64,000 bases of DNA from Ostrea edulis (lineage: Eukaryota), in NCBI RefSeq assembly GCF_947568905.1, contig NC_079171.1:29326001-29390000 (forward strand). The letters are read 5' to 3'. Positions 27,427-47,012 of this stretch are shown piece by piece; the first letter of the stretch is position 1, and each line of letters begins with the position of its first letter. Both the position numbers and the translations under genes were made by a program. The notes beneath the pieces were generated by a model. It was not told the DNA's origin, did no database searches, and saw only the letters and a list, made by a program, of their open reading frames with translations.

Positions 27427-27744
27427 GAGACATGCCCCATTTACATTTTAATCAAAGATAAACTATTGTCAATGGGGGATGAGGAATTTTGTGTGTATGT
27501 TGAAGGAGTGAAAGTTAAGGATTGCGACAATTTTTTCCAATATTATGTTATTTTGGTGGCAGCGATATATGTTTTCAACCTTGTATATCCAAAAACTTGG
27601 ATGAAATCACTGACTTTCGTTCAGAATGTTTTAATTGGATTGAAGGACCAACAGGGTCAGGGCACATTAGACAGAAGAATTCTGAGTGTTCTGACTGCTT
27701 TGAATTCTCTTATACCACAACAACAAACGTGTATGGATAATTGA
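27427..27744 (+). other. unrelated coding fragment fused in frame to the truncated Academ transposase
   Basis: After DLDLD the ORF switches to TCPIYILI...FCVYVEG...VAAIYVFNLVYPKTWMKSLTFVQNVLIGL, which does not match the Academ C-terminus seen at ~55150-55525. Confidence 0.5.
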
Positions 27745-28501
27745 TCCGGACATGCTGTCACACTACAAAAGCAGCAATATTCAATGACATTTTGTACATT
27801 TCATTTCATATACTATTGGTATTTTAAAGGATATTACTTCAATGTTTAAGTTTGTTCATGCTTTTACAGTTTAAACACCATTTGCTCAAAATAAATAGTA
27901 TGTTGTATGTGACAGCAAGGTAATCATACTGTATCTAGAGTCATTGTTAAAAATCTTATACAAATGCTTTCTGTTCTTTTGTCAAGTTTTCCTCTATTCA
28001 GGGTCAAGTTAAGGGTCACACCCCAAAAAAGTTATTGAGTCGCTTTCTGAAGTACTTTTTAAATGAAATTTATAATGCCAGTAGAGCTTCAGGTCCTCAT
28101 GGACCTTTCATTGTAAATGAATGTACTTTGTGTATCATAAATTTCAATTTCACTTTTTATTATAAATGTATAATTGAAAATGTCAATATGTGTATTGTTT
28201 TTCTTTTCTACTTTGAGAAAGAAGGTTTGCAAAAAGTAAATTTTAGTAGTTAAGATAAGTTAATATTACTGAAAATCTAGTAATTTGAACTAATTAAGAA
28301 CTCATTATGTTAGTTGAATTTACTTAGACGAAAGTGAAAATTACTAGTTTGGGCAAGTAAATAGAACTTGTCACGTAGTTGATTTTACTAACAACTAGTA
28401 CTAGTGAAATAGTAAATTTTATTTTAACAACTAGTGATTATATGGACAGTAAAATTTACTAGTTCTCCTAGTAACTTTTACTAGTATTTTCTTTCAGTGT
28501 G

Positions 28502-28651
28502 TGGATCCACGGCAGACTGGGTGCGGGACACAGAGAAGTTATACCAACCTGCTGTGTTTGGCGAATAAGAGACACCTTCCCAGAACCATCAGGACAATAT
28601 GTGGGATATTTAGATGGTGTGATGGACTTGAAGGAACAGTTGAAATAAATT
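28502..28651 (+). pseudogene. isolated second KolX/P2X7-C-like 3' fragment
   Basis: [37 protein letters not shown]...*, homologous to the KolX tail at 24097-24250. Confidence 0.8.
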
Positions 28652-28704
28652 TAGTCACAGATATTTCAATGAATCTTGATTTTTTTTTCTCTGTAACAAG
28701 TTGA

Positions 28705-28764
28705 GATATTTTATTGAAAGTAGACATGAACGGCAAACTGACAACTCAACTGTCTGACTAACGA
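28705..28764 (+). pseudogene. short Penelope-like reverse transcriptase remnant
   Basis: DILLKVDMNGKLTTQLSD*R resembles the LDI...G.L.T.LYDKR segment of Penelope-like RTs; only 20 codons. Confidence 0.45.
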
Positions 28765-31268
28765 CAAAAGCATAGGCCGAGACTTTGGTGACAATTCCAA
28801 GAGAGTTATTTCCTCACGAGCGGGAAGTTTAACACTACACCAACTAATGTTTCTCTTAATAACATTGTGATATAAAAATATATTGGCTGACACCCCAAGG
28901 GGTTTTATTGTGAAGTTTAACTACCCTTCGCACCTGGGTTACAGAGAGCAAAAATATTAAATGGTGCATTATCAAACGTGTACAACTTACGCAATGATAT
29001 ATTTCACAAAATTCGTAATCTCACAGGCCTCAACACCATAATCTGAGAATAGACTTAAATCAAAATTTTGATTGCTTATAACTTAATATTTATCAAGCAT
29101 TGATGTTTATAAAAGTGCTTGTTTACAGAAAAGTTAAATGCAATCATATGATGAAAAAATTTTTTTTTTACGAATATTATTTCAAAGGTTAGTTCGATTC
29201 AAAAGTTAGACTTAAGTCTATTCTCGAGGCCAGGCTGTTGCATTTCACTTCGCAAAATATATAGCATTTGCACGAATTAATATTCTTTACTACCATACAA
29301 AGATGTTAAGTCGTACATAATCATATTCGTGGCCTGGTGTTCTTCAGCTTTAAATACTATCTTTATCCATATATTGTTAGTTAGCTCGCGGTCTGATCAT
29401 TCACGACATGAAAAACTTACAGTACTTTTGTACTGTACAGTTATTAGTTGAATGTTCTCAGACACCCTATATCGTACGTGACACGAATTTGTCAAAGAAC
29501 GCGTGAATAGCACACTTCGCGTTCTGTAAATTTAAATAATCCGAATGGAACAGAAATTTCCGCATTGCGCCTGATAAGCGGTTGTCTTCGCACAGAATTT
29601 CATTTAAACTGCATATTGTAAATTGCATTTGCTAATTTAAGTAAAATTTTACATCATCAAGTGAAAACTTAACACGGAAAAATAGTTTTACAGATCAATC
29701 CCCCTCAAGGAACCTCCTGTCAGAATTCCAGTCTGGCAGTTTGAAATCCGATATTAATAGAATCCAGATGCTGATTCAGGCTATAGTATTCTGGGAGGGG
29801 ATCGAACGATGAGGGTGAAAAACTTTCTACATTTTTGGGGGATTTTTGTTTAATGAAATAGTACTTAGCGACATGTATTGTAAATGGATATGAACATGGG
29901 GATATTTTCATTTGCAAATTGGTATTATCGTAATATTAGCTCTTGGTGCTTAATTAAACCCAGTACATTCTACATGAGGGTGAGGTCAGGATGACCTTGT
30001 AATGACTGCTGTGGGCTGTGGAAGAGATGTGCACTTCTCATTTGGGTTATGGAAGCCGTCTCTCTCTTGATTTTCCTTGAGAATTACTAAGTGTATATTC
30101 ATGTAATCTGTCGACAGGTTAAAATATTAATTGGGTAGGGCAATACAATGCATGTCAGCGTTTTACAACATCACTGTTATATTGCCAAATATTTTGATTT
30201 CGTAAATCGCTTATCGCACAATGTGAAGAACATTTAAATATTTAAAGCAAGTGTGTATTGCAACTAATGACGCTGACACAATGTATTGAGACAGAAAGTC
30301 CCCAAGTATAAGAACATCTAAGTGTTAAATCGGGGTATTTCCTATACATCGTACATATTATTCCATAGATGTCCTCTATGACAAATGATCCTGATACTTC
30401 TTTGGGCGGTAAACGATACCCGTACTGGAATTGTGTAATTGAGTGGCATAGGTGGAAACGAAATGCGCATGTGGTTGTGTTCCATTTATTAAATATGTTG
30501 ACTACGCATTAATTCAGTATTTTCGCCTATAATTCAAAAATTTGATCTTCAACCCCCACTTTTTTTTAGTCGCATTTTAAATTGGAAGATCAGACCTTGA
30601 AAATTATGTAAAATTTTAGAAATTGACATTACTCTCAATACGTCCTTTTAAACTCTCAATTTTGATATCATGAAGTTTTTCGTATATCAAATGCCAAAAG
30701 GTCATTATTTATTTCCTTTACTAGTATTAATTTCTTATTTCATCTGTATTGTTAGAGGACAATATTATGTATTTATTTTATGTAATGATTAATTTGTGTT
30801 GCTTATGTTGTGTTGGCACTAACAGAAAAATCCAGTTTAAATGAAAAAAATTTAAGTGCAAAAAGGTCATGCTTAGAACACTATAGCTCAATAACAAGCG
30901 TTGTGACCCCAGTTTTTCTTTTTAATTTCCTAATTTTCCTTTAATGTAGAAATCAAAAATACACTCCTTAAGAGCAACATTCCCCAATATTATATATATA
31001 TTTTTAAAAATTCATATTATGTATATTTTAAAAAAAATTTCAGACCCTCTCCTTTCCCCCTATGCCCTAGAATAACACAATTCCACCCTATATACATCCC
31101 CAAGAATTTTAAAGAAAAAAACTATTTATAAACTGGCACCACTTTCGTGGTCAATGAAAGAGGGGTAAAATTCATAGTTTGTAACCTAATAAAGACAGAA
31201 ACCTTCTTCGACTTTTATGAAACTTGGCACAGATACTCGTACAGCCATACTACACATCCCTATGAATA

Positions 31269-31783
31269 CGCAAGTTCCGAGTTACCCAAAAGTTATTTCC
31301 CTTTGTCGAACTCTTTCGCATTTTATGACGTATGATGGGTACACAATGTATACATTATACCGTAGACTGGCATTGTACATAACGATTACGTACGATTAAT
31401 GTAATAAAAGCGTAACTTTTGTTTATATCAATCACTGGTATGCATATTTTGGCCATATCAAGCATAATTTGTTTGAATAAGATCATCAAATTGGCTATTG
31501 ACTCATTATTCGTTTTCTCTTCTACATGAGTGACGCTTTTATCAAAGAAAGATGGTAATTAACAATATTTGTTTGAGCCATTTTGTTATCCAATACTCAT
31601 AAACTCACTAAAGTTGCCTTTTCCCCGAGATAGGATGGTCTCAGAAACTCTGGATATCATCTTTTAAGAAATAATACAACGATAGTAATTAGCAAATGTA
31701 CCCACTGTCATCATATTTTACGTCATAATTTACGGAAGAGTTCGACAAAGGGAAATAAGTCTTGGGGGAACTCGGAACTTCCG
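31269..31783. mobile_element. MITE with ~65-75-bp imperfect TIRs, TA-flanked
   Basis: cgcaagttccgagttacccaaaagttatttccctttgtcgaactct... is inverted at ~31718-31783; TA at 31267-31268 and 31784-31785. Confidence 0.75.
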
Positions 31784-31789
31784 TATTGT

Positions 31790-33600
31790 CATCTGAACAG
31801 CAGAGTGAAGGCCCTTTGAAGTGATGAGCTAAAACAGAGGGTGAAAGCATCAGACACATAATACACAATTTTGAAATGCTCACATATGACATATGCTGCA
31901 ACAAATTTCTTGCGGACGACGTATAGTGGACGAAGAGAAAATGATGGAGATGATACATCAAACGATACAATTTCGTCAGTCTAACACCTGTACCTCTCCG
32001 AACATCACTGTGCTGCACTCGACAAAAGCAGGAATTTCATGGAAATACATACTGACCTGTGTAAATTGCCAGTTCAATTCACCCGAATTTGCCTTATTCC
32101 AAGAGCTCCATCAAGAGGGTCCTGCTCGCAAAGCATCGGCATCAAACATGACCCTGGCACATGCCCTTCAGGACACTTCACTGGGGGCTGAGAAGGCTAT
32201 AGAATTCCTGAGCTGCCTAGACATCCCGCCTCCCATTAAGGCCTCTCTCCAGAAGCTCCTGTTCAAAATAAGCACAAATATTACAAACTTAACACAAAGA
32301 AGATATGCATCAAAACATACATCAAGTGAAAGAGATCAACACGATCCGTTGCCACCCAGAAAATGTCATAAACATCTTAGCATATGCCTGTTATGACGGT
32401 AACATCATGTTCAGCCGCAGGACCCTCGGACAGAATGCTAGTCAAGCCTTCACCTTGACAGTTGAAACCAACACTTACAGAAAATATACACTTGCCTGTG
32501 CTCAGCAATACAAACTCTGCTGGGCAGGTACATGGCTAAGGGACAAGGCAATGGAAGTAGTTTGTCCAGGCGGTCATCCTGAGTGTACTTCCAATCTACC
32601 ACGGGTAGCACAATTTTCAGAGTGAGATGGGGAAGGACATTGGTACACAGCTGGCCTTGCAAGATGTATTAGCCCAGTATATTACCACAGACGGCGACGC
32701 TCAAGGTGCCAAAGGAGTGGACGAAGCCATGCGAGCTCTGTATCCCCTATGGAAAGTAGAGCGTCTAGCTGAACCCGTCCATCTCGGACAGTCACAGTTC
32801 CGTGCCAGCAACCGAGCAGTCTACAGCGAAGGCATGTTCTATACCAAGACCAAAGAACAGAAGAAAGGGCTACAAAGAGTATTTAGCAATGATCTAAAGT
32901 CAAGATGTGCTTTTATAGTCAAGGAAGTGTTCACCAAGTTTGACAGAGACCTGCAGAAGATGAATGATCTCTTACCTAAAATCCTTGAGGCCACTGTTCT
33001 GTGCTATACTGGAGACTGCTCAATGCGTGCAACATATTCCCTTGTTCGTGATGGAGGACATGTTTCCAACTGGTGGAACTTCAGTCGTAATATTTGGCCT
33101 GCAAATGAGTGAAAATGACATTAGAATTTTAACAGAAATCCTTAAAATGAAACTAAGTGTTGAGGTAATCAATGCCATGAAGCTGCTGACTGATACAAAC
33201 GGCCAATGAGTCTTACCACCGTAGTGTCAGTTGCAACATGCCCACGTTTTCCCGAACAACGGATGGTCGTCTCCACTCCATGATACATCGTCGGAACAAC
33301 TTACCCGGTACATCAACCACACTGAAATGCGAATCTGCTGAAATACAGTGCTCTGAGCATGGGAAGTACCAATTCGATAGACTGGACCAAAGTTCCTGTC
33401 CAATCAAGCCTATCACAGAAATGAGAGAGTAAAGAGTAGAAGGAACCTACTACTGACCAGGAAAATGGCAGAGCATCACTAGTACCGAGAAGAACATAAA
33501 GGAACTTGAGACTACCGGTACTGCAAAGGCCAGATTGACTTCAACTCACCTGCCGTCCGTGATCATCCTTAACACAAGAGGGGAGGATTGCGGTACCATT
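31790..33600 (+). pseudogene. KolobokP-like DDE transposase, frameshifted (copy 1)
   Basis: CVNCQF, DIPPP, CYDGN (D), ITTDGD (D), EPVHL, DLKSRC, FSRT..GRLHSMIHRRNNLPG; homologous to the 40722-42850 gene. Confidence 0.75.
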
Positions 33601-33769
33601 TCAGGCATCGCCATTGAAGAGAGTGACTGATTGAGTTGCTACGAACTCCTCATTAGCAATTAATAACTGCTCATTTATAAATACTTATATGTACTAATTA
33701 ACATTGTGAGGAGTGACACATGCCTCTCCCACCTTCAGCGGTTTAACATAGTTATAAATTGATAAACTT

Positions 33770-34138
33770 ACCAAAGATTGTTGTTGTCCATATGTAGCTC
33801 CAGACGATAGTGAGATGTGTTTCCCTGGATTTGCAGGTCTGTCGCTGGCTATTGATAACGTGCGGCTCCAGAGCAATATGCTCTGGTACAACACAATGTG
33901 TTGTGGCCCAAGTGAGATGCATCAATTGATGCAACTAACTCATGGTGACGATGATGTAATATGACACTGAGTCTATGCACGTGCAGCGTCTGTCAGCTGT
34001 TCTTTATCGGATGCTTGTAGTACATAACACCACACTTGTTGCTGCTTCTAGCCCCGTCCAAATTCGACAATGACCATTTTAACCTGGGGCATAGCCTGAG
34101 TGCACCTTCTCCAAATACTTGGCAAAAAAAGCTTCCAT
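33770..34138 (-). pseudogene. His-Me finger (His-Cys box) nuclease of KolobokP-like copy 1
   Basis: MEAFFAKYLEKV...HCRIWTG...HVHRL...DASHLGHNTLC..PEHIALEPHVINSQRQTC, with stops and frameshifts; convergent with the transposase. Confidence 0.8.
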
Positions 34139-34190
34139 GCTCAGGAAATGAAAGTAAGCCACCGACGAAAATAAATTTAGACCAGGGCCA

Positions 34191-35600
34191 AATTCATTCG
34201 TTTTACTAGCATCGTTTATACCACCATGAACCCCTTTTTTTATGAAGGATGAATACTCTGCTTACTGATGTTCCCTGGCCTCCTTAATTTATATCCAGGT
34301 ATTGGGCGAGTGGCGAAAACCCCACCTAAATGAATATAAAACATATGTGAGTTAGCCAGGTATAAATACCACTCTTTATTTATTAAACATTCTATCATGA
34401 ATCACTTCTAATACAATTACAACAAAATACATTTTACAATAAAATATATGGTAAACATCTGTATGCGGGTATACCAGTTGCGCTTCTTGAGTAAGAACAT
34501 TAACTTCTGACTTAGTAATCTTCCTTTATCTGTATAATTTCGGAAATGAAAGTCTCGTTTGTACCAACATGGTAATCTGAGAAGGTTGTGATTTTTCCGC
34601 TAACAGTGCAACTTGTCTCAATTTCTCCATTGTTTTGGGGTTGTGAGTAACAACTAAAGATTTTATATCACTTTTCAAGCCATTCATCGTAACCGATAAC
34701 AACATTTTCTGGGACATTTCTTATTCATGGCCTGTTTAGTTATTATCATTAAATAATCTCCCACATAAACCCGTTAACTGTCTAGAAATCTTGTTCAATT
34801 TGTACAGATTCCAAACAAATATTGGACGTAGGGTCTTCTCACTTAAGCATTGATTGAGATAAGTGCTATAAATTCTAAATCTCCTAATCTCTAGATGCAA
34901 GCATCTCCGAGGGACTATTTTTGCGTTAATCAGGCGTTTTTTTTTTCATTATTTCATGCTTGATTAAGTCTGGTAAATGACTGGGATATATATCTCTGCT
35001 GGCATATAGTCTGTCCACCTGTTCTGTTCTTGATGTCATTCAAGAAAAACAATAAAGGTATCGATGGGTGCATCAATATCATATCAGACCTTTCCCATTG
35101 ATCATAACAGGCTTTTTATCTTCCGAAGTCTTTTATCGTAGGAAAACTTTCCACTTACGGTAAATAAATTAGAATAGGGATGAGTAACAGAAGTGAGAGA
35201 TACTACACAATTCGCCAACGCATGTCCTTGTGTACCATCCCAGAGCTAGAACTATCACAGACTCCAACCTTGATTACTATTGGACCTCAACTAACGGGGA
35301 TATCTGAGTATGTTAGAATCGCTGAACTCTATGCCTGTTATGTCATCCACTCCTCAGGACCGATTGAATTCCTTCGTTTTACTAGAACCGTCTATACGAT
35401 CATGGTGGACCCTTTCTATTAAGCATAAATACCCTGCATACTGATGTCTTCTGGCCTCCTTGTGTGGGGTGAGTGGCGCAAAACCCTACCTAAATGAAAT
35501 ATAATATCAAGTCTAGTTGTGAATTAACGAGGTACAAATACTACTTTTTATTTATTGATCATTATATTATGAATAACTTAATACAATTAACAATGAAATA
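34191..35600 (-). mobile_element. possible decayed LTR retrotransposon remnant
   Basis: Diverged ~240-bp direct repeats at 34191-34430 and 35367-35600 (partial third at ~35660-35718) flank a gag-like fragment MNGLKSDIKSLVVTHNPKTMEKLRQVALLAEK (34526-34717). No clear TG..CA ends or PBS. Confidence 0.45.
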
Positions 35601-37156
35601 TATGATATAAACATCCTTATAACACTTATGCTCAATATGATAATTCTGAATGCGCACGACTTACCTAAATGAAATATAAAATCAATGCGAGTTGTGAGTT
35701 AGCCAGGTACAAATACCACGACTAACTTTCCACAGAAGCGGGTTCTATATACACAATCGCAACGCTGATCTGTTTTTAAATTACCTTATTTGTAACGTTC
35801 TCAGATATATGCACCTGCATTAATCTTTAATTTAAAAACAATTTAATTATTTGATTTGAAACTTTGAATTCGTTCATTGCACATTCAAATTCATCTTGCA
35901 TATTGTTGCATTTTAATTTTAGATTACTGATTCATTCCAACAATTGACCTCTTGACCTGGTCTGGTGGTCTTATCGATATATATTGCTACTGTAAAACAC
36001 CCACCACCTATTTTACCTAATTTTTACACATAGTTAACTTTAGGTCAAAATGATTTCATTGGATGAAAGGTGAAGATAACGAACAGTAACTAGCTGTGAT
36101 CAATCTCGCAACACCTTGGATACTAACCGTGCTTCTTGAGAAGCTTAAGAACGCAGAAAATATTTACAACAGCGACCCATCATCGATGTGTTCCAACGAA
36201 CACACACATACATATAGCTAATGTATATATTTACAATCCAAAGATATCTCTCCTGTATGTCTTGCACACACATGTGCAACAACAATTAAAATCATTTTAT
36301 AATAAATATCCCAGGCCTCATTAGCCAGGTTTGGTGATAATTGTTTATTTTCTTTGTTGACGTTTTCACTAATAATGATACTTGAGATCTGGATCGGAAT
36401 TGTCTTGATCGGACATCGAGTTGTCACTCTCATCTTGCGATATTCCCATTATTACACGTAATTATCCTTGTATAACTAATGTAGTGTGACTTTCTTCATC
36501 TTCTACGTCAATATCCGCTTCTTCATATTCAAATTGTAAATATATTATAAGATTTCCCGATCGAAATCTGTCCCATTAATTATATAGGTCCGGCATATTA
36601 AAACTCACCAGATGGCCTGAAACTTCATTTTCTGAAGTTTGCCTCCTCGTCCTGGTTCTTACTCTGCTTCAGTTATCCTGGTCACGACACCAAAATCATT
36701 CTTATGTAGCCGGATTATTTCAGACTTTTTCTGCCCACAAAGTCTTAACCTGTAGACTTACATGTATACCGACAAAATCTTGTAACTCAGACTTTTACCA
36801 ACAAAGTCTTAATAATACTCAACTCGCGTTCTGTTTTCAGAGTTTATTACTAACATAAACTCAACAGCATTCAAATATAGTACCAAGTTCAATTTTAAAG
36901 CTAACCAAAAAATCTATAAAACTTTTCTGACTGACAATTTTACAAACATATATAAATGGTTACGTTATCAGCTGCATTGGCAATGTTGCGCCGTAACAAA
37001 CCTACTACAGCAGCGTACAGTTTTGTGAATAGCAACACATTGATCAACTGGCGATTAACAATAAAATGCTGAATTATATATATTTAAATTTTCTTTTATA
37101 ACTTATCCACATGACTACATGTACCATAAATTTACTAAGTAAATCAGGGAAATTAT

Positions 37157-38004
37157 CTGCAATGATACATGAGATATGATTTTAACATGGAATAGGTATA
37201 GGGTTACCGTATACACATGCAAAATCAGACTTGTGGTAATCGATCTTAAAGTTATCCCATTGAAGGGAGTGATCAGGCCTGCTACTTGTAGCTGCACTGA
37301 TCTCCGGGGTGGAGGGCTCCTTGCTGGTGGTTCTAAAGAATTTATTATGACATGGTAATGAACAATAATCTAGAGTGGGGATCAAAGTAAATTAAGTCAT
37401 TGCAAACCATCACTTACCTTCCGGTCACTTGGGACGACTGTGCAGTCATTACCACGACATGAATTTCCCTTCCCCTGGCCATCTTGTGTGCATGCACAAG
37501 ATGCGTGTCCAGGCGAAGGACGGCTTTTCCACACTTGGGGCAGTCCTTTAGTCTGAAGACGGAAAAATGGATTTGAGAAAGAAAATGAAAATTAATAGTA
37601 CCTTTCGATGCATGAAGAATGTGATTGTTCGGTTTTAATATGCTGCTGGTTCTTACTTAGATTTGTTCTTCCTGGCCTCTGCCCTGGACCTCTTGTGTAC
37701 GGTCCGAAGATGGCGAGGAAGGTGAACAACCTCCACTCCAAACTCCGGACAGGCGGTCCTGGTTCTCGCGCCGTCCCCCTTTCGGCCACCTTCCTCTTCT
37801 TTGCATGACTCTTGATGTTATCGTCTGTAGATGAAAAACCCATTGAATTACAATCCACACATATTAATAGTTTATGGTAATAATTCTACCAAATGCTAGA
37901 AATGAAGTACGTTACCCTCACCCTCTTTCTCTTCCCCCTCACTGGAGGAGACTTCTCCAGATTCTGGGAAAGGCATGAAGGTGGGGTCGTCTTCCGCCTC
38001 CCTC
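37157..38004. repeat. ~850-bp direct repeat; second copy at 39694-40155 plus 43933-44313
   Basis: Near-identical sequence from ctgcaatgatacatgag to cgcctccctcca; copy 2 is interrupted by KolobokP and lacks a 12-bp stretch present in copy 1. Confidence 0.92.
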
Positions 38005-40358
38005 CAATTGAGCTGCAATTTACTCGTCGACAAAAAGTCTTAGTCCAAATTCTACCGTTTTCATATCATAATTTTTTTATCGTTTGGACTACCATAAATT
38101 TTATTACATATTCTTTCTTCTCTCAACGAGACGAACAATTTGATGTAAATATGTTGGGCTTTAGTACGAATAACAAACCCTAACCCTAACCCTGACTTTT
38201 TGTCAATAAATGCATACCACATTCTCTTCCTCCTCTTCTATCTCCTCGATGAGGGGACCCCGTTCTTCTGTTGGGTTGCCTTCTATCATCTTATGCCAAA
38301 AACAATATGATATTAATCATATGAAAGAAAATCCTTGTTACGGTTTATGCAAATACCAAACAAATATATGCATACCAGTTGGTCTTTGTTCCTCATGACG
38401 GTTTTTATGGCTCTCGTGACCTTCACCGCGTCCGCCTTCCTCTGGGTGAGGATATAAAAACTATCCTGAGTGGCGGACCGGTGATTCATCTGAGCCGCCA
38501 ACTTTTCCTTTGAAAGGGGGAACCTGTCTCTGACCTGTAAAAGAGGGTAGAAATGTTCCATATCTTTACCTATGCATTCCTAGTTCCATTCTTACGTTTT
38601 TTGATCAAATGACTTTAAAATGTACCGATGTGGCGGTCCCCTGCCTCATCTTCGTTCCTGAGATGTCTTTCTCGAGACCAGTCGCCTTCCAAATGGATTT
38701 GATGGCCTTGTCCATTGTTGATGTTGTCATTGGTCCGGGCGATGGTGTTCTGCTGGGGAAAGTCACGAAGACAGGTGCAGAGTCTCCCTCCAGGGAGCTG
38801 TTGTATCCAGGCAACCTGGTTCTCCCCTTCAGGAATCCCTGTACCTGCCTCCAGAGACGATCCTCCAGCACCAGGGTCACTGGCGATATCTGGCCAGTCT
38901 TGTGGGCTGCGATCTGAAAGATAATCCAACACTTTGATTATACTCTTGTGTCTTTCACATTGATAAAGGTGACCTTTTATTTGTGTCATGGAAGAAGACT
39001 TACCACACACACACGGCAATCCTCCTGCAGCTCGGCATTTTTCAAATGCCGCAGCTTAAAGTTGACAAGGGCCCCCACCCTCTGGCCGTTGTCAATGATA
39101 ATGTTGAGGATGAGGAAGTTCCGGTCCAACACAAACTCCCTCTCCAGCACGACTTCCTGAGATGGCTTTTGAAAGTCCTCCAGGATCCGTTCCGCCTGTT
39201 GGTATATCTCAGACTCCTGGAATCGCTGGATCTCCTCCGGCTCTATCCTTTGCTCTGTAAATAAACAATACATTGAAGATAATGGGAGATAAACTACTAC
39301 TCTACCAATTACCAAAAGATAGTATTTAATGTACCATTGTTAGTGACTATTTTAACCACACACCGCTTGTTGATCGAGGTCTGTAACGACCTCGCCCATC
39401 TCTGCAAGCGTGCGGCCACCTGTGTGTAGGGCCCGATCTCCAGCTCCTTCACGTCCATCAGGTACTCGTAGAAGTCTCTAAAAGACCCTAAGAAAATTAA
39501 GAAAGCAAATTCTACAAAAATGTCACTAAAGGTTCAGATTCATAATTCCAATACAAAATCAGATTGTGCATTCATAATAGTTTACCAATATAACTTCTTA
39601 TAGTCCCTGGCGCATATTTATTCGTTGCCCAGGAAAACCACTGATTTCTTACGCGGACCACATCCACAACAGCGTAGGGTCCAGATGTCGCCACTGCAAT
39701 GATACATGAGATATGATTTTAACATGGAATAGGTATAGGGTTATCGTATACACATGCAAAATCAGACTTGTTGTGGTAATCGATTTTATAGTTATCCCAT
39801 TCAAGGGAGTGATCAGGCCTGCTACTTGTAGCTGCACTGATATCCGGGGTGGAGGGCTCCTTGCTGGTGGTTCTAAAGAATTTATTATGACATGGTAATG
39901 ATCAATAATCTAGAGTGGGGATCAAAGTAAATTAAGTCATTGCAAACCATCACTTACCTTCCGGTCACTTGGGACGACTGTGCAGTCATTACCACGGCAT
40001 GAATTTCCCTTCCCCTGGCCATCTTGTGCGCATGCACAAGATGCGTGTCCAGGCGAAGGACGGCTTTTCCACACTTGGGGCAGTCCTTTAGTCTGAAGAC
40101 GGAAAAATGGATTTTGAAAAAGAAAATGAAAATTAATAGTACCTTTCGATGCATGTATAGGAAAAACACCAGAATTGCCTAGCTACAGGGCGCCGCCATT
40201 GTGGACACCCAAAGTTGTGTGGAGAAGAAAAGTTGACAGGAGATCTGATTGGTCATTAACAGGAGATCTGTCCTATACTGAGGTAGCGAGAACCAGTTTA
40301 TGAGGTAAGTGTAAGAAAGTAGTGCATGTTTAGCGCCATTTGTCAGTTTTACAATAAA

Positions 40359-40766
40359 ATGGATGCATTTTTTGATAATTTGAAAGAAAAAGTAAATCGT
40401 AAAAGTGTACGGGGCCCCCAAAGGGGCACCTGCATCATTTGGAGGGGTAGGATTTCCCCCTCTGGCTATGGGCTACAAACTGTCTACTGGCCAGAGGAGG
40501 GAAGAAAGGTGGAAAAGGCCCACAGAGTTGCCCTTATGGCAGAGTGGAAACTGACTCGGAGTCAGTTTCCACGTGACAATGTAGAATGCAGCCACCTCTG
40601 CCATACCAAGCTGTGTGTGAACCCCTAGCATCTGGTAGTGGAGTCCCACTCTATCAACCAGGAGAGGATTCACTGCCAGTTGCAGGGGGTGTGCAGCAAG
40701 TCACACATGCCCGGGTGCATTTTATGTAATTACATGTATTTTACATGTAAATTTCATTTCATTTAG
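40359..40766 (+). pseudogene. His-Me finger nuclease of KolobokP-like copy 2
   Basis: MDAFF...CIIWRG...GYG...KAHRVA...ECSHLCHTKLCVNP*HLVVESHSINQERIHC; single in-frame TAG at 40626-40628. Confidence 0.9.
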
Positions 40767-42850
40767 CATATTTAGATGGTGGTTTTGAATAGCTGTGCTC
40801 AATTTTTTTGCATAATTTCTGCTCTTTGATGATTTTGAGAGCATCAGATTTTTTCTATAGTTTACTTCTTCCTGATGTTGTTCATAAAGTTTATACAATT
40901 TTCTTCTTCTAATTACTCTGGTATTTCTATACTTTTTAGATTTTTGGTACATTTTTTGTCTTTCATAATTATTTTGAATATTTTTCAGAGATTGGCTAAC
41001 CCTCCTCCCCCCCCCCCCCCCCCCCCCCCTCTGGGATAGGAGCACCCACACCAGCACATAAGGCCTTTAGGGATTCCCCAGGACCATTATTTGTACTGTG
41101 AGCTGTGACATTCTTGGGTAGTGAACGCCTTAGACGTCGATTAAAGCTCTCCACTTTCTGTGTATTGTGGGAAAGTTATGTAGTAGTTTATTTTTCTCTG
41201 CTTTTGAATTTCTGGGCATGATTTTCTGTACAGATTGGTCTTTTTTGATGGCCTTTCTGACATTTTCGGCAAGATGCCGTGTGTCGAGAAAATGTCTAGG
41301 TTTGTCCTGCAGCTTGCCTTCAGCATGCAAAGACTCTGCGGCCTTGTATATCGTGCTGTCAGGATCTGATGTTATGTCCTTGACACATAAATCATTCTTG
41401 AGAAGGTCTTCCATGCCTTCCTTGGCCCAGGTGAATTCATCACCGATGTTTTTGGCCTTAGGTATATTCGCCCCACATGTCTGCTCAGTGCACACATGAC
41501 TGGGATTGTTCTTGAGATGTTGTCCTTTGGGGCATTTTTGTTTTTAGTTACTAAAGATATTATTTCGTGACTACTGGTCACATTCTCTGCAATTGAGAAG
41601 ACGGTTTGTGTAGCTGGCTGGAAGGGGGTTTCCCCTACCCCAGAATATAGGGCGTTATTATACATCCCGTCGCACTGAATTCCTATGGTTTTTGGACTTT
41701 TGGTCCCCCTCAATTTATTAATATCAACTAATTTCTTACATCTTTTTTTTCATATCAGACTTGTTTAAGGTGATTACTTTTTGCATAATGGTGTTGCTTG
41801 TTTTTTGTAGAGAAGACTCGGCTGGAGGTGGGGTGTTGGTTGACATGAGGATTTTACGAAGAGAAGAACTGCCAATGGGGGTTTGACTGAGACCTATTTG
41901 TAGGCCATAGTTTATTGCTGCTGCTTTGCTTCCCCTGGAACCGGATTCTACTTCGACATAGAGGCTATACATTTTGGACACGTAGGTGCAGGTGTTACAT
42001 TTAAGCCGTAACCTAGTGCCCAGGCCACACCTCTCTTCAGAGTCCAAGTCCCAGGTTAGGTCACCATCACAGCCTGGATTGGCCCACCCATGTTCTTTGA
42101 ACTCTGCGTTGAACATGCCACATGTCTTTTCCAGATGCAGCAGTCTGGAGGAGTCATTTTCACACCTGCCAAAATCAGTTATGTACCTGATTACTTCCTA
42201 ACCAGGCAAGTTCATTTTCAGAAATTAGAGTTACTTCCCTTTGACTATACTTGTTCTCAAAGTTGAGTCAAGAGGCTCATCACAGTCCCTAACAACTGTT
42301 TTTTGTAACTTTCTCTTCATATGAATGAACAATTATTGTAATGTTGCTATAATTTAGAGAGTTTATTAATTATAAAATTAATTAAGCTAATTAAATTTAC
42401 AGGATCTTAGGGATACCCCTTATTTCAGCCAATTTGGCCATATATGGGCCTATTCTGAGAATTAGAAAAAATATTTTCTACTCAAAGAGGTTTTGTTTCA
42501 TAATTTAAGAAAGTTAGAAGAATTGTAATCGTTACCCTGAGGATTCAGCCTGATTTAAAGTCTCATGGTTTCCTTCCTTTTTCAGGGGTCTTGGCCGAAG
42601 CAGTCGGTGGCACCCAGGCCTGAGCATCATTTCCTGCTCCTCGCACAGAGAGGGTGGATGCGTCACCAGTTGTAGGGTTTCCCTGTCAACTCTCGTGAAT
42701 GGTGCAGGTGAGTTTTCTTTTTTTTTCATGTAATTTCCCCTTGTTGTGAGGCACATATTTTGGCTTAAAACCATCATTATTCCCTTTTTTTGAATTTTCC
42801 CATCTTTGAAAACTGACATAATTCTGCTAGGAATATTCTGTCTGAAGTGA
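40722..42850 (-). pseudogene. KolobokP-like DDE transposase (copy 2), frameshifted and internally deleted
   Basis: RLLRP, CDGDL, LKCNTCTY, TPPP, IQCDGMYN (D), ITSDPDS (D), LDTRHL, TQKVESFNRRLRRSLPKN (E). 5' start approximate. Confidence 0.8.
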
Positions 42851-44365
42851 AATTCACTTGTGATGTGCTTTTTCCAGTGCTCTATCAGCATCATGTCAAG
42901 TTTAAGTGATATCGTGTAATAATTTATTATCATGATAGGAATTAGCAAGCAACCCTCACTGCAAAATGTATCTGAGTTAAAGAGGGTAGTGACAGTTTTA
43001 CTGTTACAGAGAAACAACACTACTAGATCAGATTACCCCTCATATGTTTTGATAACCTCCTATTAATTGGCTGTCAGCAGCTTAGTGAATTGATTCTGAA
43101 TTGGAAAAGTAAATGCATTTTGAAAGCATTTTTCCTTGATAAATTAAGATTTGTTGGCCATTTTTTTCAAAAACCGGGTAGAATGTACCCTGAATATGTA
43201 AATTACATGTGAATCCTCACATCCTCTTGAAAACATAAAAAATAAGACAATAAGACTGTTATTTACATTTTTACTTCATTAAGCACTGTAAAAAGTCATT
43301 ATAAAGTTGACATTCAACACAGCTTCATGTCACAGTTGAGTTCATCATGTGTGAGGGGTTACATTATATAGATAGTCATAATTTACATGCTTTTTCATGT
43401 TACATATTTTACATGTACTATGTGCATGTTATCTAAAAATGTCAAATTGGCCACTTTTTCACTTTGTTTTCCATTTGGTTATAGGAAAAACACCAGAATT
43501 GCCTAGTTACAGGGCGCCGCCATTGTGGACACCCAAAGTTGTGTGGAGAAGAAAAGTTGACAGGAGATCTGATTGGTCATTAACAGAAAATCTTTGTGAT
43601 GGAATTTAATAGTGAAATATAAGTGATAAAAATGACAGGTGACATAACAGAATATGTAGAAAGATACAGAAGTTATAAGGGAAGATCTGAGTGGAGAGGT
43701 GATATTTGGATGGACAATTTCATTCAGTGCGGATCTACACCAGTTGTAAACAGGCCAAAATTTGAAGGAAAAACGCAACGGCAAGCCGTATATTTTTTGG
43801 TGGAATTTTGAAGGGGAGATGATGAACTTTGCTGAATGGTGACTGATTTTTTGAAAATTGGCTTAATAAATAATTGACAGTGATTGGAATTTGTATGGAA
43901 GTCTATGGGAAAACATTTGGTGGTGTTTGTCCATGAAGAATATGATTGTTCGGTTTTAATATGCCGCTGGTTCTTACTTAGATTTGTTCTTCCTGGTCTC
44001 TGCCCTGGACCTCTTGTGTACGGTCGGAAGGTGGACAACCTCCACTCCAAACTCCGGACAGGCGGTCCTGGTCCTCGCGCCGTCCCCCTTCCGGCCACCT
44101 TCCTCTTCTTTGCATGACTCTTGATGTTATCGTCTGTAGATGAAAAACCCATTGAATTACAATCCACACATATTAATAGTTTATGGTAATAATTCTACCA
44201 AATGCTAGAAATGAAGTACGTTACCCTCACCCTCTTCCTCTTCCCCCTCACTGGAGGAGACTTCTCCATATTCTGGGAAAGGCATGAAGGTGGGGTCGTC
44301 TTCCGCCTCCCTCCACCTCCATCACCACCCTCCTCCACTCCTCATCTTCGAGAGGCTCGTCCTCC

Positions 44366-44620
44366 GATGTCTGAAATAATTGTAGTTGTTATTGAATATG
44401 CAATCTAGAAAGAGAACGAAGTGACTAGAAGCTTTAAGTTAAATACTTACATCCTCCTGGTCAGAGACCAGGGCTGTCTCTACAGCTTCTTTCTCGCCAG
44501 ATGTCTGAAACAGTTGTAGTTGTTATTGAATATGCAATCTAGCAAGAGAACGAAGTGACTAGAAGCTTTAAGTTAAATACTTACATCCTCCTGGTCAGAG
44601 ACCAGGGCTGTCTTTAACTT
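44366..44620. repeat. 134-bp tandem duplication containing a small minus-strand exon and its intron
   Basis: Units start at 44366 and 44500; on the minus strand each has ...ccctggtctctgaccaggaggat|gtaag. Confidence 0.85.
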
Positions 44621-46031
44621 CCTGAAATAGCCTCATATGTCTTAGAATAAATGTTAGGAGTTAGTAGGACTTCCGCAAAACACCAGAATCCCAACTCTGC
44701 CACCAATTTTTTAAATTATGTATATTTTTTTTATCCCACCGCTGCAACTATTTTGTAACTCTAACCCTAACCTAGTGTCTCAGAGAGCATTTAAAGAGAA
44801 AACTGTATTCTTGATATTTACCCCTGTTTCCTCCTCCTCCCTTTCAAGCATCTTCTGCAGAGAGTCTTCCCAATCGTTCTTCTGTTCTTCAACGTCCATG
44901 GGCAGCATCTGGAATAATTTTAATTGCTAATGAAGATAGGTATATGTATATATGTACTAGAATATCGGTACCTGTATGTGGATACCTGTTTCAAGCCCCT
45001 GTATGTGAGTACCTATATGTTGGTACCTGTTCATAGGTAACTGTTAGAATGTAGGTGTATACCTGTTCCATCTCTTGATCATCCAAGATCCTCATCCTCT
45101 TTTACTCTATGTAAATGCACTCTCGCATTTTTTTTCACTATCGTTTTTCAGTAGAGAAGATAAATTTGTAAAGCATTAAGTCTTTGTAATAGATATTTAC
45201 CTCCTCATCACACCTTCTTAATTTAATCTTGAGCGGCCTCAGGCCGCTAAATTGCCTTTCAATTGGGACTCCCCTTCTCTAAAAGAAATAAGTTTGTAAA
45301 CAGAGGTCAATCTCAAAACTCCTATGAGAAATTCAAATTAAATAATTGAGATTGTGAAGGATGAAATGTTATCTTCCCTACTTTGACCCTTATGATACCA
45401 TCTGGCAAGTGTCGTTTGGTGGTGGGGTATGCCTTCGCCTTCATTCTAAACAGGTTTGGATAACCCGGGTTAATTTCCCATCCCTCCAATATCGGAAACG
45501 AAATATTGGAGATAAATAAATAGATGAGCAGATAGATAGATAGATAACACAGTTGGCCTCCTCAACAGCTAAATTGTTGAAAGAATGTTACCTCGAACTG
45601 GGGATTCACCGTCAAGTTCGAACGGATCCTCTCGACTGCCTCATCCACAACCGCCGCCTCTTCCTTGTTTAGACGTGCATTCTGAAATTATTTTAATGGT
45701 TATTGCAAACAGGTATCCGTATGTGGGTACCTGTGTGTAGACACCTGTATGAACGTAGCTGTATGTGGGTACCTGTATGCTTTAGATGTCCTTGCAAGTA
45801 AGTCCCTATATGAATATTCATTAAAGTATCTCAGAGGGGATTTAAAGAGACCACTGTATCATTGATATTTACCATTCTTTCTTCATCTTCCTCCTCACGC
45901 TCCTCCTCCCTCTCCTCCTTCTCCCAACTCTCCTCCTTCTTCCTACTCTCCTCCTCCTATGCCGACCCTGATCCGTACTTTCATCATTCTGCAACATATG
46001 AAATAATTGCAATGGTTACTGTATGTGGGTA

Positions 46032-46170
46032 CCTATCACAATAAAAAAATCACCGAGCGGACCATTCCCGCCCCGATAAAAACTCCCCCCTCGCCCTATC
46101 ACAATAAAAAAACCCGGAGCGGACCATTACCTCCCCCGATAAACACTCACCCTATCACAATAAAAAAAAA
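46032..46170. repeat. ~56-63-bp degenerate tandem repeat, about 2.5 copies
   Basis: cctatcacaataaaaaa at 46032, ~46095 and 46151. Confidence 0.75.
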
Positions 46171-47012
46171 ACCAATCGGATTTGTTTTAGAAAATGGACG
46201 TGTACGACTTCGTCAGCTCCGATGAAGAGATGCCAGAAGGTTGGCTGCGATTAGAGGTAAATAATCTTCATTATATTGATTATGAAAATGGTGAAGATCA
46301 GGGCTACCATATTGTTAGGAAAGCAGGTAGAACGTATCATATGCAAGGTGAAGATAACGAACAGTGATTAATCTAGCCCCTTTAACGGTGAACTCACCCC
46401 CTCCACTGTTTCTAGAATGTCTAGTACAAAGGAGGGTTGCTTCGAACAAACTAATCTCACAACTGTTCTCAATCCCTCAGTGTCCATTGTTGAAATACAT
46501 TCCTACAGTGATGTTTATTTTGGCGATTTTGTAATATATATGATATGATAATGATAGAAGAAATAAAATGAAGTTTGAATGTTATTTACCTCTATATGTG
46601 TTTGTTTCTCCTGTCTGACTCTGATGGGTAATTGTTGTTTATCTAGTCCTTGATGGACATACCCACCACTTACACGTCCTCTATTCCGATTTCTGGGTGC
46701 CTGTAATCATATTTACCGCATGTGGGCGAAGCAGACGATATTCGGGAAATCAGAACAGCCAAAAACGGTGGTAGAATTGTCGTGACTAGTCCCAAGCTGA
46801 TCAGTAAATCAATCTGACTAAAGTACAGACCTATATTATTATATATATAGGATCTGATAACTCCCCATAAGAGATCATGTTCTGGTGAATTTTGCATTGG
46901 CCAATGAAATCATAACTTCCTTTTGCTTGTCTGGTATTTCGGAAGTCATTCCATTTTCATACGTATGAGATGATACCCGATGAGTTCCGATAAGCAAATA
47001 ACACAATTAAAA

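What the first reader, a model, noticed from the sequence alone, without database searches (positions are those of the whole stretch)
37157..44313. YR catalytic exons enclosed by ~850-bp near-identical direct repeats
Seen: with KolobokP removed, the repeat period is 2537 bp, and the unique 1.7-kb core holds all R-K-R-H-Y exons. The repeats carry an acidic exon and two C2H2-like finger exons, so fingers now lie on both sides of the recombinase. The 38004 junction sits inside an apparent exon, 7 nt after a ttgcag acceptor. Inference: either a tandem duplication creating a new domain order, or the trace of a 2.5-kb circular intermediate. Recombination between the repeats would release a YR-encoding circle.
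Basis: partly seen in the sequence, partly recalled or inferred. Interest (0 to 1): 0.7.

Follow-up and report, generated by a model that had tools for sequence, protein, structure and literature searches.

The report
Rearranged dead oyster recombinase gene copy
The 850-bp repeats around this flat-oyster tyrosine-recombinase gene are real, but they come from a one-off, patched-together partial duplication in a decaying gene copy, and nothing shows a DNA circle.

Summary
Copy A is 37157-38006. Copy B is 39694-40155 plus 43932-44315, split by a 3776-bp transposon. A and B are 98% identical over aligned bases, and the period is 2537 bp. The 1.7-kb core holds intact R, K, R, H and Y exons of a minus-strand, intron-bearing tyrosine recombinase (YR).

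The genome is Ostrea edulis. The gene belongs to a small bivalve family of about 25 loci, with no reverse transcriptase in the unit, so it is Crypton-like.

Seven other copies that I read show one order: finger(s), YR, then a C-terminal 'HGRRxF' domain (the eighth, C5, is too decayed to show fingers or that domain). All three close paralogues carry the 850-bp segment once, on the 5' side.

In this locus homology to the two 92-95% paralogues stops at 38203. The C-terminal exons are missing. In their place are 196 bp of filler (a repeat fragment plus TTAGGG-like hexamers) and copy A. A shares eight derived substitutions with B, so it was copied from B's own lineage.

Both copies carry a frameshift before finger 1 and a Cys-to-Phe change in it, so no finger-YR-finger protein can be made.

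Contigs from three independent studies carry the junctions, so this is neither an assembly artefact nor private to the reference.

Verdict: a locus-specific non-homologous rearrangement in a decaying copy. A circle origin is unsupported but not excluded. One oddity remains: A's end and a 98-bp deletion next to B share the same breakpoint.

The parts
37157..38006 (-). Repeat copy A, the extra 3' copy. It holds a truncated acidic exon (38012-37916; its first 6 nt come from filler), finger exon 1 (37824-37657), finger exon 2 (37552-37418), the linker exon (37332-37217) and a 60-nt intron ending at the AG at 37158-37157.
   Evidence: A shares 8 derived substitutions, a 6-nt insertion and the Cys-to-Phe change with B against C8b and C9. 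The flank|A junction is bridged by contigs of X17 and X3.
38007..38202 (.). Filler at the duplication junction: 7 nt of unknown origin (38007-38013), a fragment of a dispersed/satellite repeat (38014-38176), a TTAGGG-like tract (38177-38196) and 6 nt more.
   Evidence: The repeat fragment is 89% identical to C8:45242295-45242473 and about 80% to arrays with a 540-bp period on many chromosomes. The telomere-type 12-mer is found 4 times against 0.23 expected. The filler is absent from the paralogues. The filler|core junction is bridged in X2 and X3.
38203..39693 (-). Unique core: YR exons X5 38289-38218, X4 38534-38376, X3 38913-38626 (K and second R), X2 39254-39004 (first R), X1b 39487-39335, and the remnant of the core-binding exon 39693-39586. 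That remnant lacks 98 nt at its start, and 13 nt after 39670.
   Evidence: Local tblastn of P0001 and P0010; exon frames; motif scan; alignment A1. The core is 94.7% identical to C8b and 93.3% to C9.
39694..40155 (-). Repeat copy B, proximal part (the original copy): linker exon 39872-39754 and finger exon 2 40092-39958.
   Evidence: It is contiguous with the core, as in the paralogues.
40156..43931 (.). Transposon inserted in the intron between finger exons 1 and 2 of B. It has a 114-bp internal direct repeat (40156-40269 / 43480-43593), CATG on both sides, and broken ORFs for a Mutator-like (PF20700) transposase.
   Evidence: The site is empty in A, C8b, C9 and C5. The X3 contig record 23 reads through the empty site in B.
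43932..44315 (-). Repeat copy B, distal part: finger exon 1 (44133-43978, with a 12-nt deletion inside the finger) and most of the acidic exon (44370-44225). Homology to A ends at 44315, inside that exon.
44316..44616 (-). Continuation of the ancestral gene beyond the repeat: the start of the acidic exon and two 134-bp tandem exon+intron units (44366-44482, 44500-44616). Both are shared with C8b and C9.
   Evidence: This shows that B's outer repeat boundary is not an end of the unit.
44617..46036 (-). Modular 5' region, 80-86% identical to the 5' regions of the ~52%-identity subfamily (C3, C1 cluster, several C8 loci). It holds a TTAGGG-like tract at 44759-44775, at a junction between modules.
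46041..46174 (-). Short array of the 54-60-bp tandem repeat. In the other copies examined (C3, three C1 copies, C8b, C9, C10) it lies 3' of the YR gene; here it abuts the 5' region.

Best explanation
The locus holds a damaged copy of a low-copy, intron-bearing tyrosine-recombinase gene or element of Ostrea edulis. There is no reverse transcriptase in the unit, so it is Crypton-like.

The ancestral layout is kept in the paralogues. Read 5' to 3' it is: 5' modules, 134-bp exon repeats, acidic exon, two CPxCG...HLxxxH fingers, linker, core-binding exon, catalytic exons, a C-terminal 'HGRRxF' domain, and a 54-60-bp minisatellite.

In this copy the DNA broke in the intron after the last shared catalytic exon, at 38203. 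The C-terminal exons and the 3' minisatellite were lost. The break was patched with a repeat fragment, a few telomere-type hexamers and an 850-bp second copy (A) of the gene's own 5' segment (B). That patch was then joined to unrelated flanking DNA at 37157.

I infer that this happened by non-homologous repair or replicative template switching (MMBIR/FoSTeS-like), possibly in a single multi-switch event. A ends on the same nucleotide at which 98 bp are deleted next to B, in a stretch predicted to form hairpins.

Shown: the structure, that it is unique among the copies, that A derives from B, the loss of the C-terminal exons, the disabling mutations shared by A and B, and its presence in several individuals.

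Inferred: the repair mechanism and the number of events.

The repeats are therefore a scar. They are not a functional terminal structure and not a footprint of site-specific circle formation.
For: - Paralogues C8b, C9 and C5 have the 850-bp segment once, 5' of the core. Their homology to the window stops sharply at 38203, yet C8b and C9 share about 600 bp more with each other, and that stretch is found nowhere in the window.
- That missing stretch encodes the C-terminal exons of XP_056003249.1 (P0010). The 'HGRRxF' motif follows the YR in C8b, C9, C3, C1a, C1b and C1c, but not in the window.
- The junction holds 196 bp of filler.
- A groups with B: 8 shared derived substitutions and none supporting any other grouping. 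They also share a 6-nt insertion, the Cys-to-Phe change and the 7-nt frameshift.
- Homology to the paralogues runs past B's outer boundary to 44616, so the repeat boundary is internal to the unit.
- The A boundary and the 98-bp deletion boundary coincide, and the deleted region folds with z = -2.66.
- The junctions appear in contigs of three studies.
- Known Cryptons have only 4-6-bp direct repeats (PMC3212892, PMC13465315).
Against: - The repair mechanism cannot be read from the sequence. The microhomology is only 2 nt (TG) at the one junction where both partners are known.
- The shared breakpoint could instead mark a site-specific cut.
- The 13-bp deletion that restores the frame after the 98-bp deletion, the intact catalytic exons, and a non-synonymous to synonymous count of 4:8 on the window branch hint that the copy may not be wholly neutral.
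- The 3'-type minisatellite lying upstream of the 5' region, and head-to-tail family clusters on C1, show that copies of this family do end up in tandem. A circle-integration mechanism would also predict that.
Confidence: 0.62

Rival explanations
1. A whole unit was first duplicated in tandem (head-to-tail, by unequal exchange or by tandem integration). Later deletions then removed the first unit's C-terminus plus the second unit's 5' region, and separately everything in the second unit after the linker intron.
For: Family members occur head-to-tail on C1:93.06-93.10 Mb. A 3'-type minisatellite lies directly upstream of this copy's 5' modules. A and B are sister sequences.
Against: It needs at least three events, and it still does not explain why two deletions begin at the same nucleotide. 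No remnant of a second core or C-terminal domain exists anywhere in the window. The filler is still needed at one junction.
Confidence: 0.15
2. The structure is a footprint of an extrachromosomal circle. A 2.5-kb circle (segment + core + filler) formed from this gene and re-entered by homologous recombination with a resident copy of the segment. Alternatively, the encoded YR cut at a pseudo-site just after the ttgcag acceptor, producing both the 98-bp deletion and the A|flank junction.
For: The layout segment-X-segment is what single-crossover integration of a circle gives. Both junctions use the same end of the segment. The catalytic exons are intact. YR elements are thought to move as circles (PMC3212892).
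Against: Conservative site-specific recombination adds no filler. The junction does not join the native ends of the unit. The same breakpoint still has to be used twice. The upstream frame is broken in both copies, and the core-binding exon is truncated. No other copy shows the layout. I saw no inverted-repeat core site at the breakpoint on reading the sequence, but I ran no scan for one.
Confidence: 0.1
3. A was captured and carried in by the repeat whose fragment lies beside it (38014-38176), in a Helitron-like or other transduction of a gene fragment.
For: The repeat fragment starts at the same base (38014) in all genomic matches, as a native terminus would, and lies 7 nt from A.
Against: No other copy of A joined to this repeat exists in the genome; the 850-bp segment is found only at A, B, C8b, C9 and C5. 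A is closest to the neighbouring B. The repeat fragment is only 163 bp and has no recognisable capture structure.
Confidence: 0.05
4. The structure is an assembly artefact, or a structure private to the reference haplotype.
For: Near-identical repeats with a high-copy transposon between them are a classic cause of misassembly.
Against: Contigs from independent studies bridge four of the junctions: flank|A (X17, X3), segment-end|filler (X17 and X3, with only 30 nt on the repeat side), filler|core (X2, X3) and core|B (X3, X2).
Confidence: 0.02

Closest known systems
Crypton DNA transposons (Goodwin et al. 2003; Kojima & Jurka 2011, PMC3212892)
   Same: A eukaryotic, intron-bearing gene whose only enzyme is a tyrosine recombinase. 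The copies are dispersed and share non-coding similarity. There is no reverse transcriptase in the unit. Crypton-A elements are reported as abundant and polymorphic in oysters (bioRxiv 10.64898/2026.02.10.705023).
   Different: No Pfam DUF3504 (CryptonA) or GCR1_C (CryptonF) signal was found. The family has paired N-terminal CPxCG...H fingers and a C-terminal 'HGRRxF' domain. The units are about 10 kb, with modular 5' repeats and a 3' minisatellite. I could not define their termini or any 4-6-bp direct repeats. Cryptons have no long direct repeats, so the 850-bp repeats are not a Crypton feature.
Split direct repeats of DIRS/Ngaro/VIPER tyrosine-recombinase retrotransposons
   Same: Direct repeats of several hundred bp around a YR-encoding unit, in elements thought to pass through a circular intermediate.
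   Different: Those elements encode RT/RNase H (and a methyltransferase in DIRS), lack introns as a rule, and carry the repeats in every copy. Here there is no RT in the unit, the gene has introns, and only this one copy has the repeats. The RT-RH-MT ORF next to paralogue C8b belongs to a separate DIRS-like element with its own unrelated YR.
Complex duplications with templated or filler insertions from non-homologous repair or replicative template switching (FoSTeS/MMBIR); short interstitial telomeric repeats added at repaired breaks
   Same: A direct duplication of a nearby segment. The junction holds a patchwork of unrelated DNA plus about 3 telomere-type hexamers. Microhomology is 2 nt, material was lost at the break, and the breakpoints lie in a hairpin-prone stretch.
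   Different: The mechanism is inferred from the junction anatomy only. This comparison rests on my knowledge of that literature; I did not read those papers here.

Membership tests
Tyrosine recombinase superfamily (Pfam PF00589 clan) | Catalytic residues R...K...(H)xxR...H/W...Y in the conserved order | tested here: met
   The window exons carry NGQRVG, HKTG, TKMRQG and MNHRSATQDSFY. The first His of HxxR is Thr throughout the family.
Tyrosine recombinase superfamily (Pfam PF00589 clan) | Significant match to the family profile | tested here: inconclusive
   The window's exon X3 alone scores 15 bits against a cut-off of 27.1. The O. edulis relative P0001 (52% identical over X3) scores 30.6, above the cut-off. 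I did not search a joined spliced model.
Tyrosine recombinase superfamily (Pfam PF00589 clan) | Catalytic-domain fold like Xer, lambda Int or Cre | tested here: met
   The AlphaFold2 model of relative P0001 (pLDDT 72, core blocks 80-95) hits only YR structures (4a8e, 3nkh, 5hxy, 2a3v, 5jk0, 1ae9, Cre, Flp), down to E = 3.5e-5. The test was made on the relative, not on the window's protein.
Crypton DNA transposons | YR is the only mobility enzyme; no reverse transcriptase in the unit | tested here: met
   No RT ORF lies in window 24000-37200 or in the C3 unit. The RT-RH-MT ORF beside C8b has its own unrelated YR.
Crypton DNA transposons | Multiple dispersed copies with defined ends flanked by 4-6-bp direct repeats | tested here: inconclusive
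   The copies are dispersed: about 25 loci, with 76-95% non-coding identity between chromosomes. The ends could not be defined because of repeat arrays at both ends, an assembly gap in C9, and mosaic 5' modules.
Crypton DNA transposons | Assignment to a described lineage (CryptonA/DUF3504, CryptonF/GCR1_C, CryptonI, CryptonS) | tested here: not met
   No DUF3504 or GCR1_C hit in any of 11 family proteins at E <= 1. Only a weak DUF3435 hit was seen (E = 0.006, P0010). No Repbase library was available.
Crypton DNA transposons | Evidence of mobility (insertion polymorphism, empty sites) | not tested
   My single reads call was used on the repeat junctions.
DIRS/Ngaro-type elements with split direct repeats | RT/RNase H encoded in the element, and the repeats present in all copies | tested here: not met
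   There is no RT in the unit. The three close paralogues hold the 850-bp segment once and seven other copies share one domain order, so only the window copy has the repeats.

The most novel reading that the evidence does not exclude
The shared breakpoint (A's end and the 98-bp deletion beside B, on the same nucleotide just after the ttgcag acceptor) marks a site cut by a family recombinase. On this reading the 2537-bp unit once existed as a circle that re-entered by recombination with the resident copy. More broadly, this unnamed bivalve YR family (paired fingers + YR + 'HGRRxF' domain, a 3' minisatellite, TTAGGG-like tracts at its junctions, copies near chromosome ends) would be a new Crypton-like lineage that integrates head-to-tail into its own repeats.
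Probability: 0.08. Interest if true: 0.65.

Novelty: new member of a known kind. Interest (0 to 1): 0.3.

Why it matters
If the repeats had been a regular feature of the element, they would have been the first long terminal direct repeats in a reverse-transcriptase-free YR element, and a direct handle on its circular intermediate. They are not. They are a scar in one decaying copy, so the locus mostly illustrates how broken transposon or gene copies are patched with nearby and foreign DNA.

Three things remain of modest value:
- The family itself is so far annotated only as 'uncharacterized protein'. It has a consistent architecture of fingers, YR and a C-terminal domain, and only 23 relatives among 1.84 billion representative proteins.
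- The two rearrangements share one breakpoint.
- The locus is polymorphic (transposon insert, 13-bp frame-restoring deletion) and could serve as a marker.

Tried and rejected
- **Assembly artefact:** rejected. Contigs of three studies carry the junctions.
- **Repeats as a family feature:** rejected. C8b, C9 and C5 hold the segment once, and the seven other copies with readable motifs share one domain order.
- **Part of a DIRS-like retrotransposon:** I considered this after finding an RT-RH-MT ORF beside C8b. That element has its own YR, which is unrelated to this family. Neither the window nor the C3 unit holds an RT.
- **A second family copy elsewhere in the window,** to explain the upstream minisatellite: none found by tblastn with all family proteins.
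- **The missing C-terminal region moved elsewhere in the window:** not found.
- **RNA family in the repeat or the conserved intron:** no Rfam match at E <= 1.
- **Profile search of solved structures with the family alignment:** only XerA, at E = 0.11. The structure prediction was more informative.
- **Pfam on the C-terminal domain and on the finger exons:** nothing significant.
- **Expression:** no RNA run holds the stretch, so splicing into A could not be tested.
- **Density of short interstitial telomeric tracts genome-wide:** the pattern count is swamped by telomeric arrays and gives no usable background rate.
- **Left out by rule:** I did not search or fold a joined spliced model of the window's gene. 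Exons were searched by reference one at a time, and their frames were checked exon by exon.
Full report
**1. The observation**

Self-comparison of the region gives copy A at 37157-38006. Copy B lies in two pieces, 39694-40155 and 43932-44315, separated by a 3776-bp insert. The two pieces overlap by 4 nt (CATG) on A.

BLAST identity is 97.2% for the first piece and 94.9% for the second, gaps included. In a MAFFT alignment A and B differ at 17 of 837 aligned bases, plus a few indels. The start-to-start distance is 2537 bp.

The gene reads on the minus strand. The unique 1687 bp between the repeats holds open exons with the catalytic residues of a tyrosine recombinase (YR): NGQRVG, HKTG, TKMRQG and MNHRSATQDSFY.

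Each repeat holds four exons:
- an acidic exon;
- finger exon 1, which reads CPEFG...HLPRHLRTVH in A;
- finger exon 2, which reads CPKCGKAVLRLDTHLVHAH;
- a linker exon.

The A/filler junction lies 6-7 nt after a ttgcag acceptor.

**2. Is it real DNA?**

I laid Logan contigs from three different studies, plus one raw-read run at about 1.5x coverage, on 36700-40700. The junctions are covered as follows:

| Junction | Records |
|---|---|
| flank\|A (37157) | X17 record 2, X3 record 17 |
| filler\|core (38203) | X2 record 13, X3 record 21 |
| core\|B (39693/4) | X3 record 23; X2 record 15 (30 nt only) |
| segment-end\|filler (38006/7) | one 155-nt contig in X17 and one in X3, each with 30 nt on the repeat side |

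That 30 nt is the k-1 overlap expected at a branch in the assembly graph.

The structure is therefore neither an assembly artefact nor private to the reference.

Two details vary between samples:
- The X3 contig that is anchored in the core runs through B's insertion site as an empty site. The transposon insert is therefore polymorphic.
- X3 and X17 keep 13 bp (CAGAGGCGACTGC) that the reference lacks after 39669.

In X2 the first 484 bp of the repeat form one contig with B-type variants at about twice the flanking depth. This suggests that A and B are identical in that animal (gene conversion). That is an inference from depth alone.

**3. What the gene is**

The organism is Ostrea edulis. Relatives found with exon X3 include XP_056003249.1 on a 77,126,126-bp contig, which is the length of the window's own contig C8, and XP_056009249.1.

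Only 23 of 1.84 billion representative proteins match X3 at E <= 0.001. The named ones are bivalve 'uncharacterized' or 'Tyr recombinase domain-containing' proteins. The language-model search points to unnamed eukaryotic clusters, mostly chordate.

The relative P0001 passes Pfam's Phage_integrase threshold. Its predicted structure matches only Xer, Int, Cre and Flp recombinases.

The genome holds about 25 loci of the family:
- three recent copies (the window; C8b at C8:26.29 Mb; C9 at C9:0.26 Mb), 94-100% identical in protein;
- an older copy (C5, 76% DNA identity, with stop codons);
- about ten loci at ~52% protein identity;
- others at ~30%.

Copies on different chromosomes share introns, 5' modules and a 3' minisatellite at 76-95% DNA identity. 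There is no reverse transcriptase in the unit.

An RT-RNaseH-methyltransferase ORF does lie next to C8b. It belongs to a separate DIRS-like element with its own, unrelated YR.

The family is best called Crypton-like. It shows no DUF3504 or GCR1_C signal, and I could not define its ends. A dispersed duplicated host-gene family cannot be excluded.

**4. The canonical layout and how this locus departs from it**

A motif scan of eight copies in gene orientation gives the same order in all seven other copies where the motifs can be read: finger(s), R box, HKTG, H...Y, then a C-terminal 'HGRRxF' domain. C5 is too decayed to show fingers or the C-terminal motif. Only the window lacks the C-terminal motif and has fingers after the YR.

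C8b, C9 and C5 each hold the 850-bp segment once, on the 5' side of the core, without the transposon insert.

Homology between the window and C8b/C9 ends sharply at 38203, 15 nt into the intron after exon X5. Yet C8b and C9 go on sharing about 600 bp with each other. Those 600 bp encode the last two exons of XP_056003249.1 and occur nowhere in the window.

On the other side, homology to C8b and C9 runs past B's outer edge (44315) to 44616. So that repeat boundary lies inside the ancestral unit.

B is therefore the original, in its original context. A is an extra copy sitting where the C-terminal exons should be.

**5. Where A came from**

A and B share eight substitutions, a 6-nt insertion, the TGT-to-TTT (Cys-to-Phe) change in finger 1, and the loss of one CGGAAGG unit, all against C8b and C9. 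No site supports any other grouping. A was therefore copied from B's own lineage after it split from the paralogues.

Since the copying, A has gained 10 substitutions and B has gained 5 substitutions plus a 12-nt deletion inside finger 1.

**6. The junctions**

Between A and the core lie 196 bp that belong to neither:
- 7 nt of unknown origin;
- a 163-bp fragment of a repeat that also forms arrays with a 540-bp period (89% identical to its best dispersed copy);
- the tract GGGTTAGGGTTAGGGTT, 10 nt from the breakpoint. TTAGGG is this species' telomere repeat.

At the core|B junction the window lacks 98 nt that all paralogues have directly after the ttgcag acceptor. Two nt of TG microhomology mark the deletion. 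A further 13 nt are missing 24 nt downstream (A1).

A's other end, where it meets unrelated flank at 37157, falls on the same nucleotide after the same acceptor. For two independent breaks in 2.5 kb this has a chance of about 0.2% (my estimate).

In the intact paralogue the deleted stretch is predicted to fold into hairpins (z = -2.66). One of them is a 9-bp inverted repeat that ends where the 13-bp deletion starts.

**7. Coding consequences**

I checked frames exon by exon. I did not build or search a joined spliced model.

In C9 the acidic exon, finger 1, finger 2, the linker and the core-binding exon connect in frame. In C8b a -1 and a +1 indel compensate each other.

In the window both A and B lack 7 nt before finger 1. 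Read from the acidic exon, finger 1 is then out of frame and a stop follows at the start of finger exon 2.

Splicing from X5 (phase 0) into A's acceptor would keep the acidic frame and then meet the same stop. No finger-YR-finger protein can result.

The 98-nt and 13-nt deletions add up to 111, so the reference allele keeps the frame from the linker into the YR. Alleles that retain the 13 nt do not.

The catalytic exons are open and 92-100% identical to the C8b product. On the window branch I count 4 non-synonymous and 8 synonymous codon changes, too few to decide on selection.

All three recent copies are damaged somewhere:
- C8b has a 1-nt gap in X2;
- C9 has frameshifts in the C-terminal exon;
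- the window is damaged as described above.

**8. Interpretation**

The simplest account is a break in the last shared intron, repaired non-homologously or by replicative template switching. The repair used a nearby stretch of the same gene, a repeat fragment and a few telomere-type hexamers as patch material, and the downstream exons were lost.

A single multi-switch event that left the template twice at the same hairpin-prone spot would explain the shared breakpoint. This is inference. I give the scar reading about 0.6.

A full tandem duplication followed by deletions needs more events and does not explain the coincidence (0.15).

A circle origin, or cutting by the recombinase itself, is not excluded (0.1), but several points count against it:
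- site-specific recombination adds no filler;
- the junction does not join native ends;
- no other copy shows the layout;
- described Cryptons have only 4-6-bp direct repeats (PMC3212892, PMC13465315).

Such a circle has no junction that the linear form lacks, so short reads cannot test it.

**9. Loose ends**

- The 54-60-bp minisatellite lies 3' of the gene in the other copies examined but directly upstream of the 5' modules here (46041-46174).
- The window's 5' modules resemble those of the ~52% subfamily more than those of C8b.
- A second TTAGGG-like tract sits at a junction between modules (44759-44775).
- The C3 copy lies about 4 kb from a long (CCCTAA)n array.
- The family forms head-to-tail clusters on C1.

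Together these suggest frequent recombination among copies, and perhaps an association with chromosome ends. I did not pursue this far enough to claim it.

Noticed in passing
window 40156-43931: The insert that splits copy B encodes broken ORFs matching Pfam PF20700 (Mutator-like transposase, E = 1.3e-23 and 2.3e-5), plus a weak His-Me finger hit. It has a 114-bp internal direct repeat and CATG on both sides. It is high-copy in reads, and at least one other individual's contig lacks it in B, so it is a polymorphic insertion. The label 'KolobokP' was not verified here.
   Followed up: partly
window 39669/39670 and 39693/39694: The 98-nt and 13-nt deletions in the core-binding exon add up to 111 nt and keep the frame in the reference allele. 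Contigs of X3 and X17 keep the 13 nt, which would leave that allele frameshifted. This is either a compensating deletion or chance.
   Followed up: partly
window 37333-37417 and 39873-39957 (intron between finger exon 2 and the linker exon): This short intron (85 nt) is about 92% conserved against the 76%-diverged C5 copy, while the flanking exons are far less conserved (about 55-75%). Only five copies exist in the genome, and there is no Rfam match. It may be a cis element or a product of gene conversion.
   Followed up: partly
window 38014-38176: A fragment of a repeat that occurs as single dispersed copies (89% to C8:45242295-45242473) and as tandem arrays with a 540-bp period on C1, C2, C3, C4, C6, C7, C8, C10 and C21. 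All matches begin at the same base, as a native terminus would.
   Followed up: partly
window 38177-38196 and 44759-44775; L039 (C3:~60.2-62.0 kb): Telomere-type TTAGGG tracts sit at two rearrangement junctions of this locus. The C3 family copy lies about 4 kb from a (CCCTAA)n array of more than 1.7 kb, some 60 kb inside the contig. The C9 copy lies 0.26 Mb from a contig end.
   Followed up: partly
window 46041-46174; L038/L039, L040, L042: A 54-60-bp tandem repeat follows the YR gene in the other copies examined (up to about 2 kb long in C3). Here it abuts the 5' modules. It may be a remnant of a head-to-tail neighbour or the result of recombination between copies.
   Followed up: partly
L031:470-4099 and L043:7323-9918 (C8:26.283-26.288 Mb): A DIRS-like retrotransposon (RT, RNase H, Dam-like methyltransferase, and its own YR) lies directly downstream of paralogue C8b on the same strand. 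A GDSL-lipase-like ORF (as in Ngaro elements) and another methyltransferase fragment lie nearby. Its YR is unrelated to the family studied here.
   Followed up: yes
window 31893-33112 (+): Two ORFs matching the same PF20700 Mutator-like transposase (E = 8e-18 and 1e-15). This is a second, separate copy of that transposon type in the window.
   Followed up: no
window 44366-44616; L031 ~8944-9797: A 134-bp unit made of an in-frame 54-nt exon (TSGEKEAVETALVSDQED) plus its intron is repeated in tandem, twice here and about seven times in C8b. This is exon amplification by tandem duplication.
   Followed up: no
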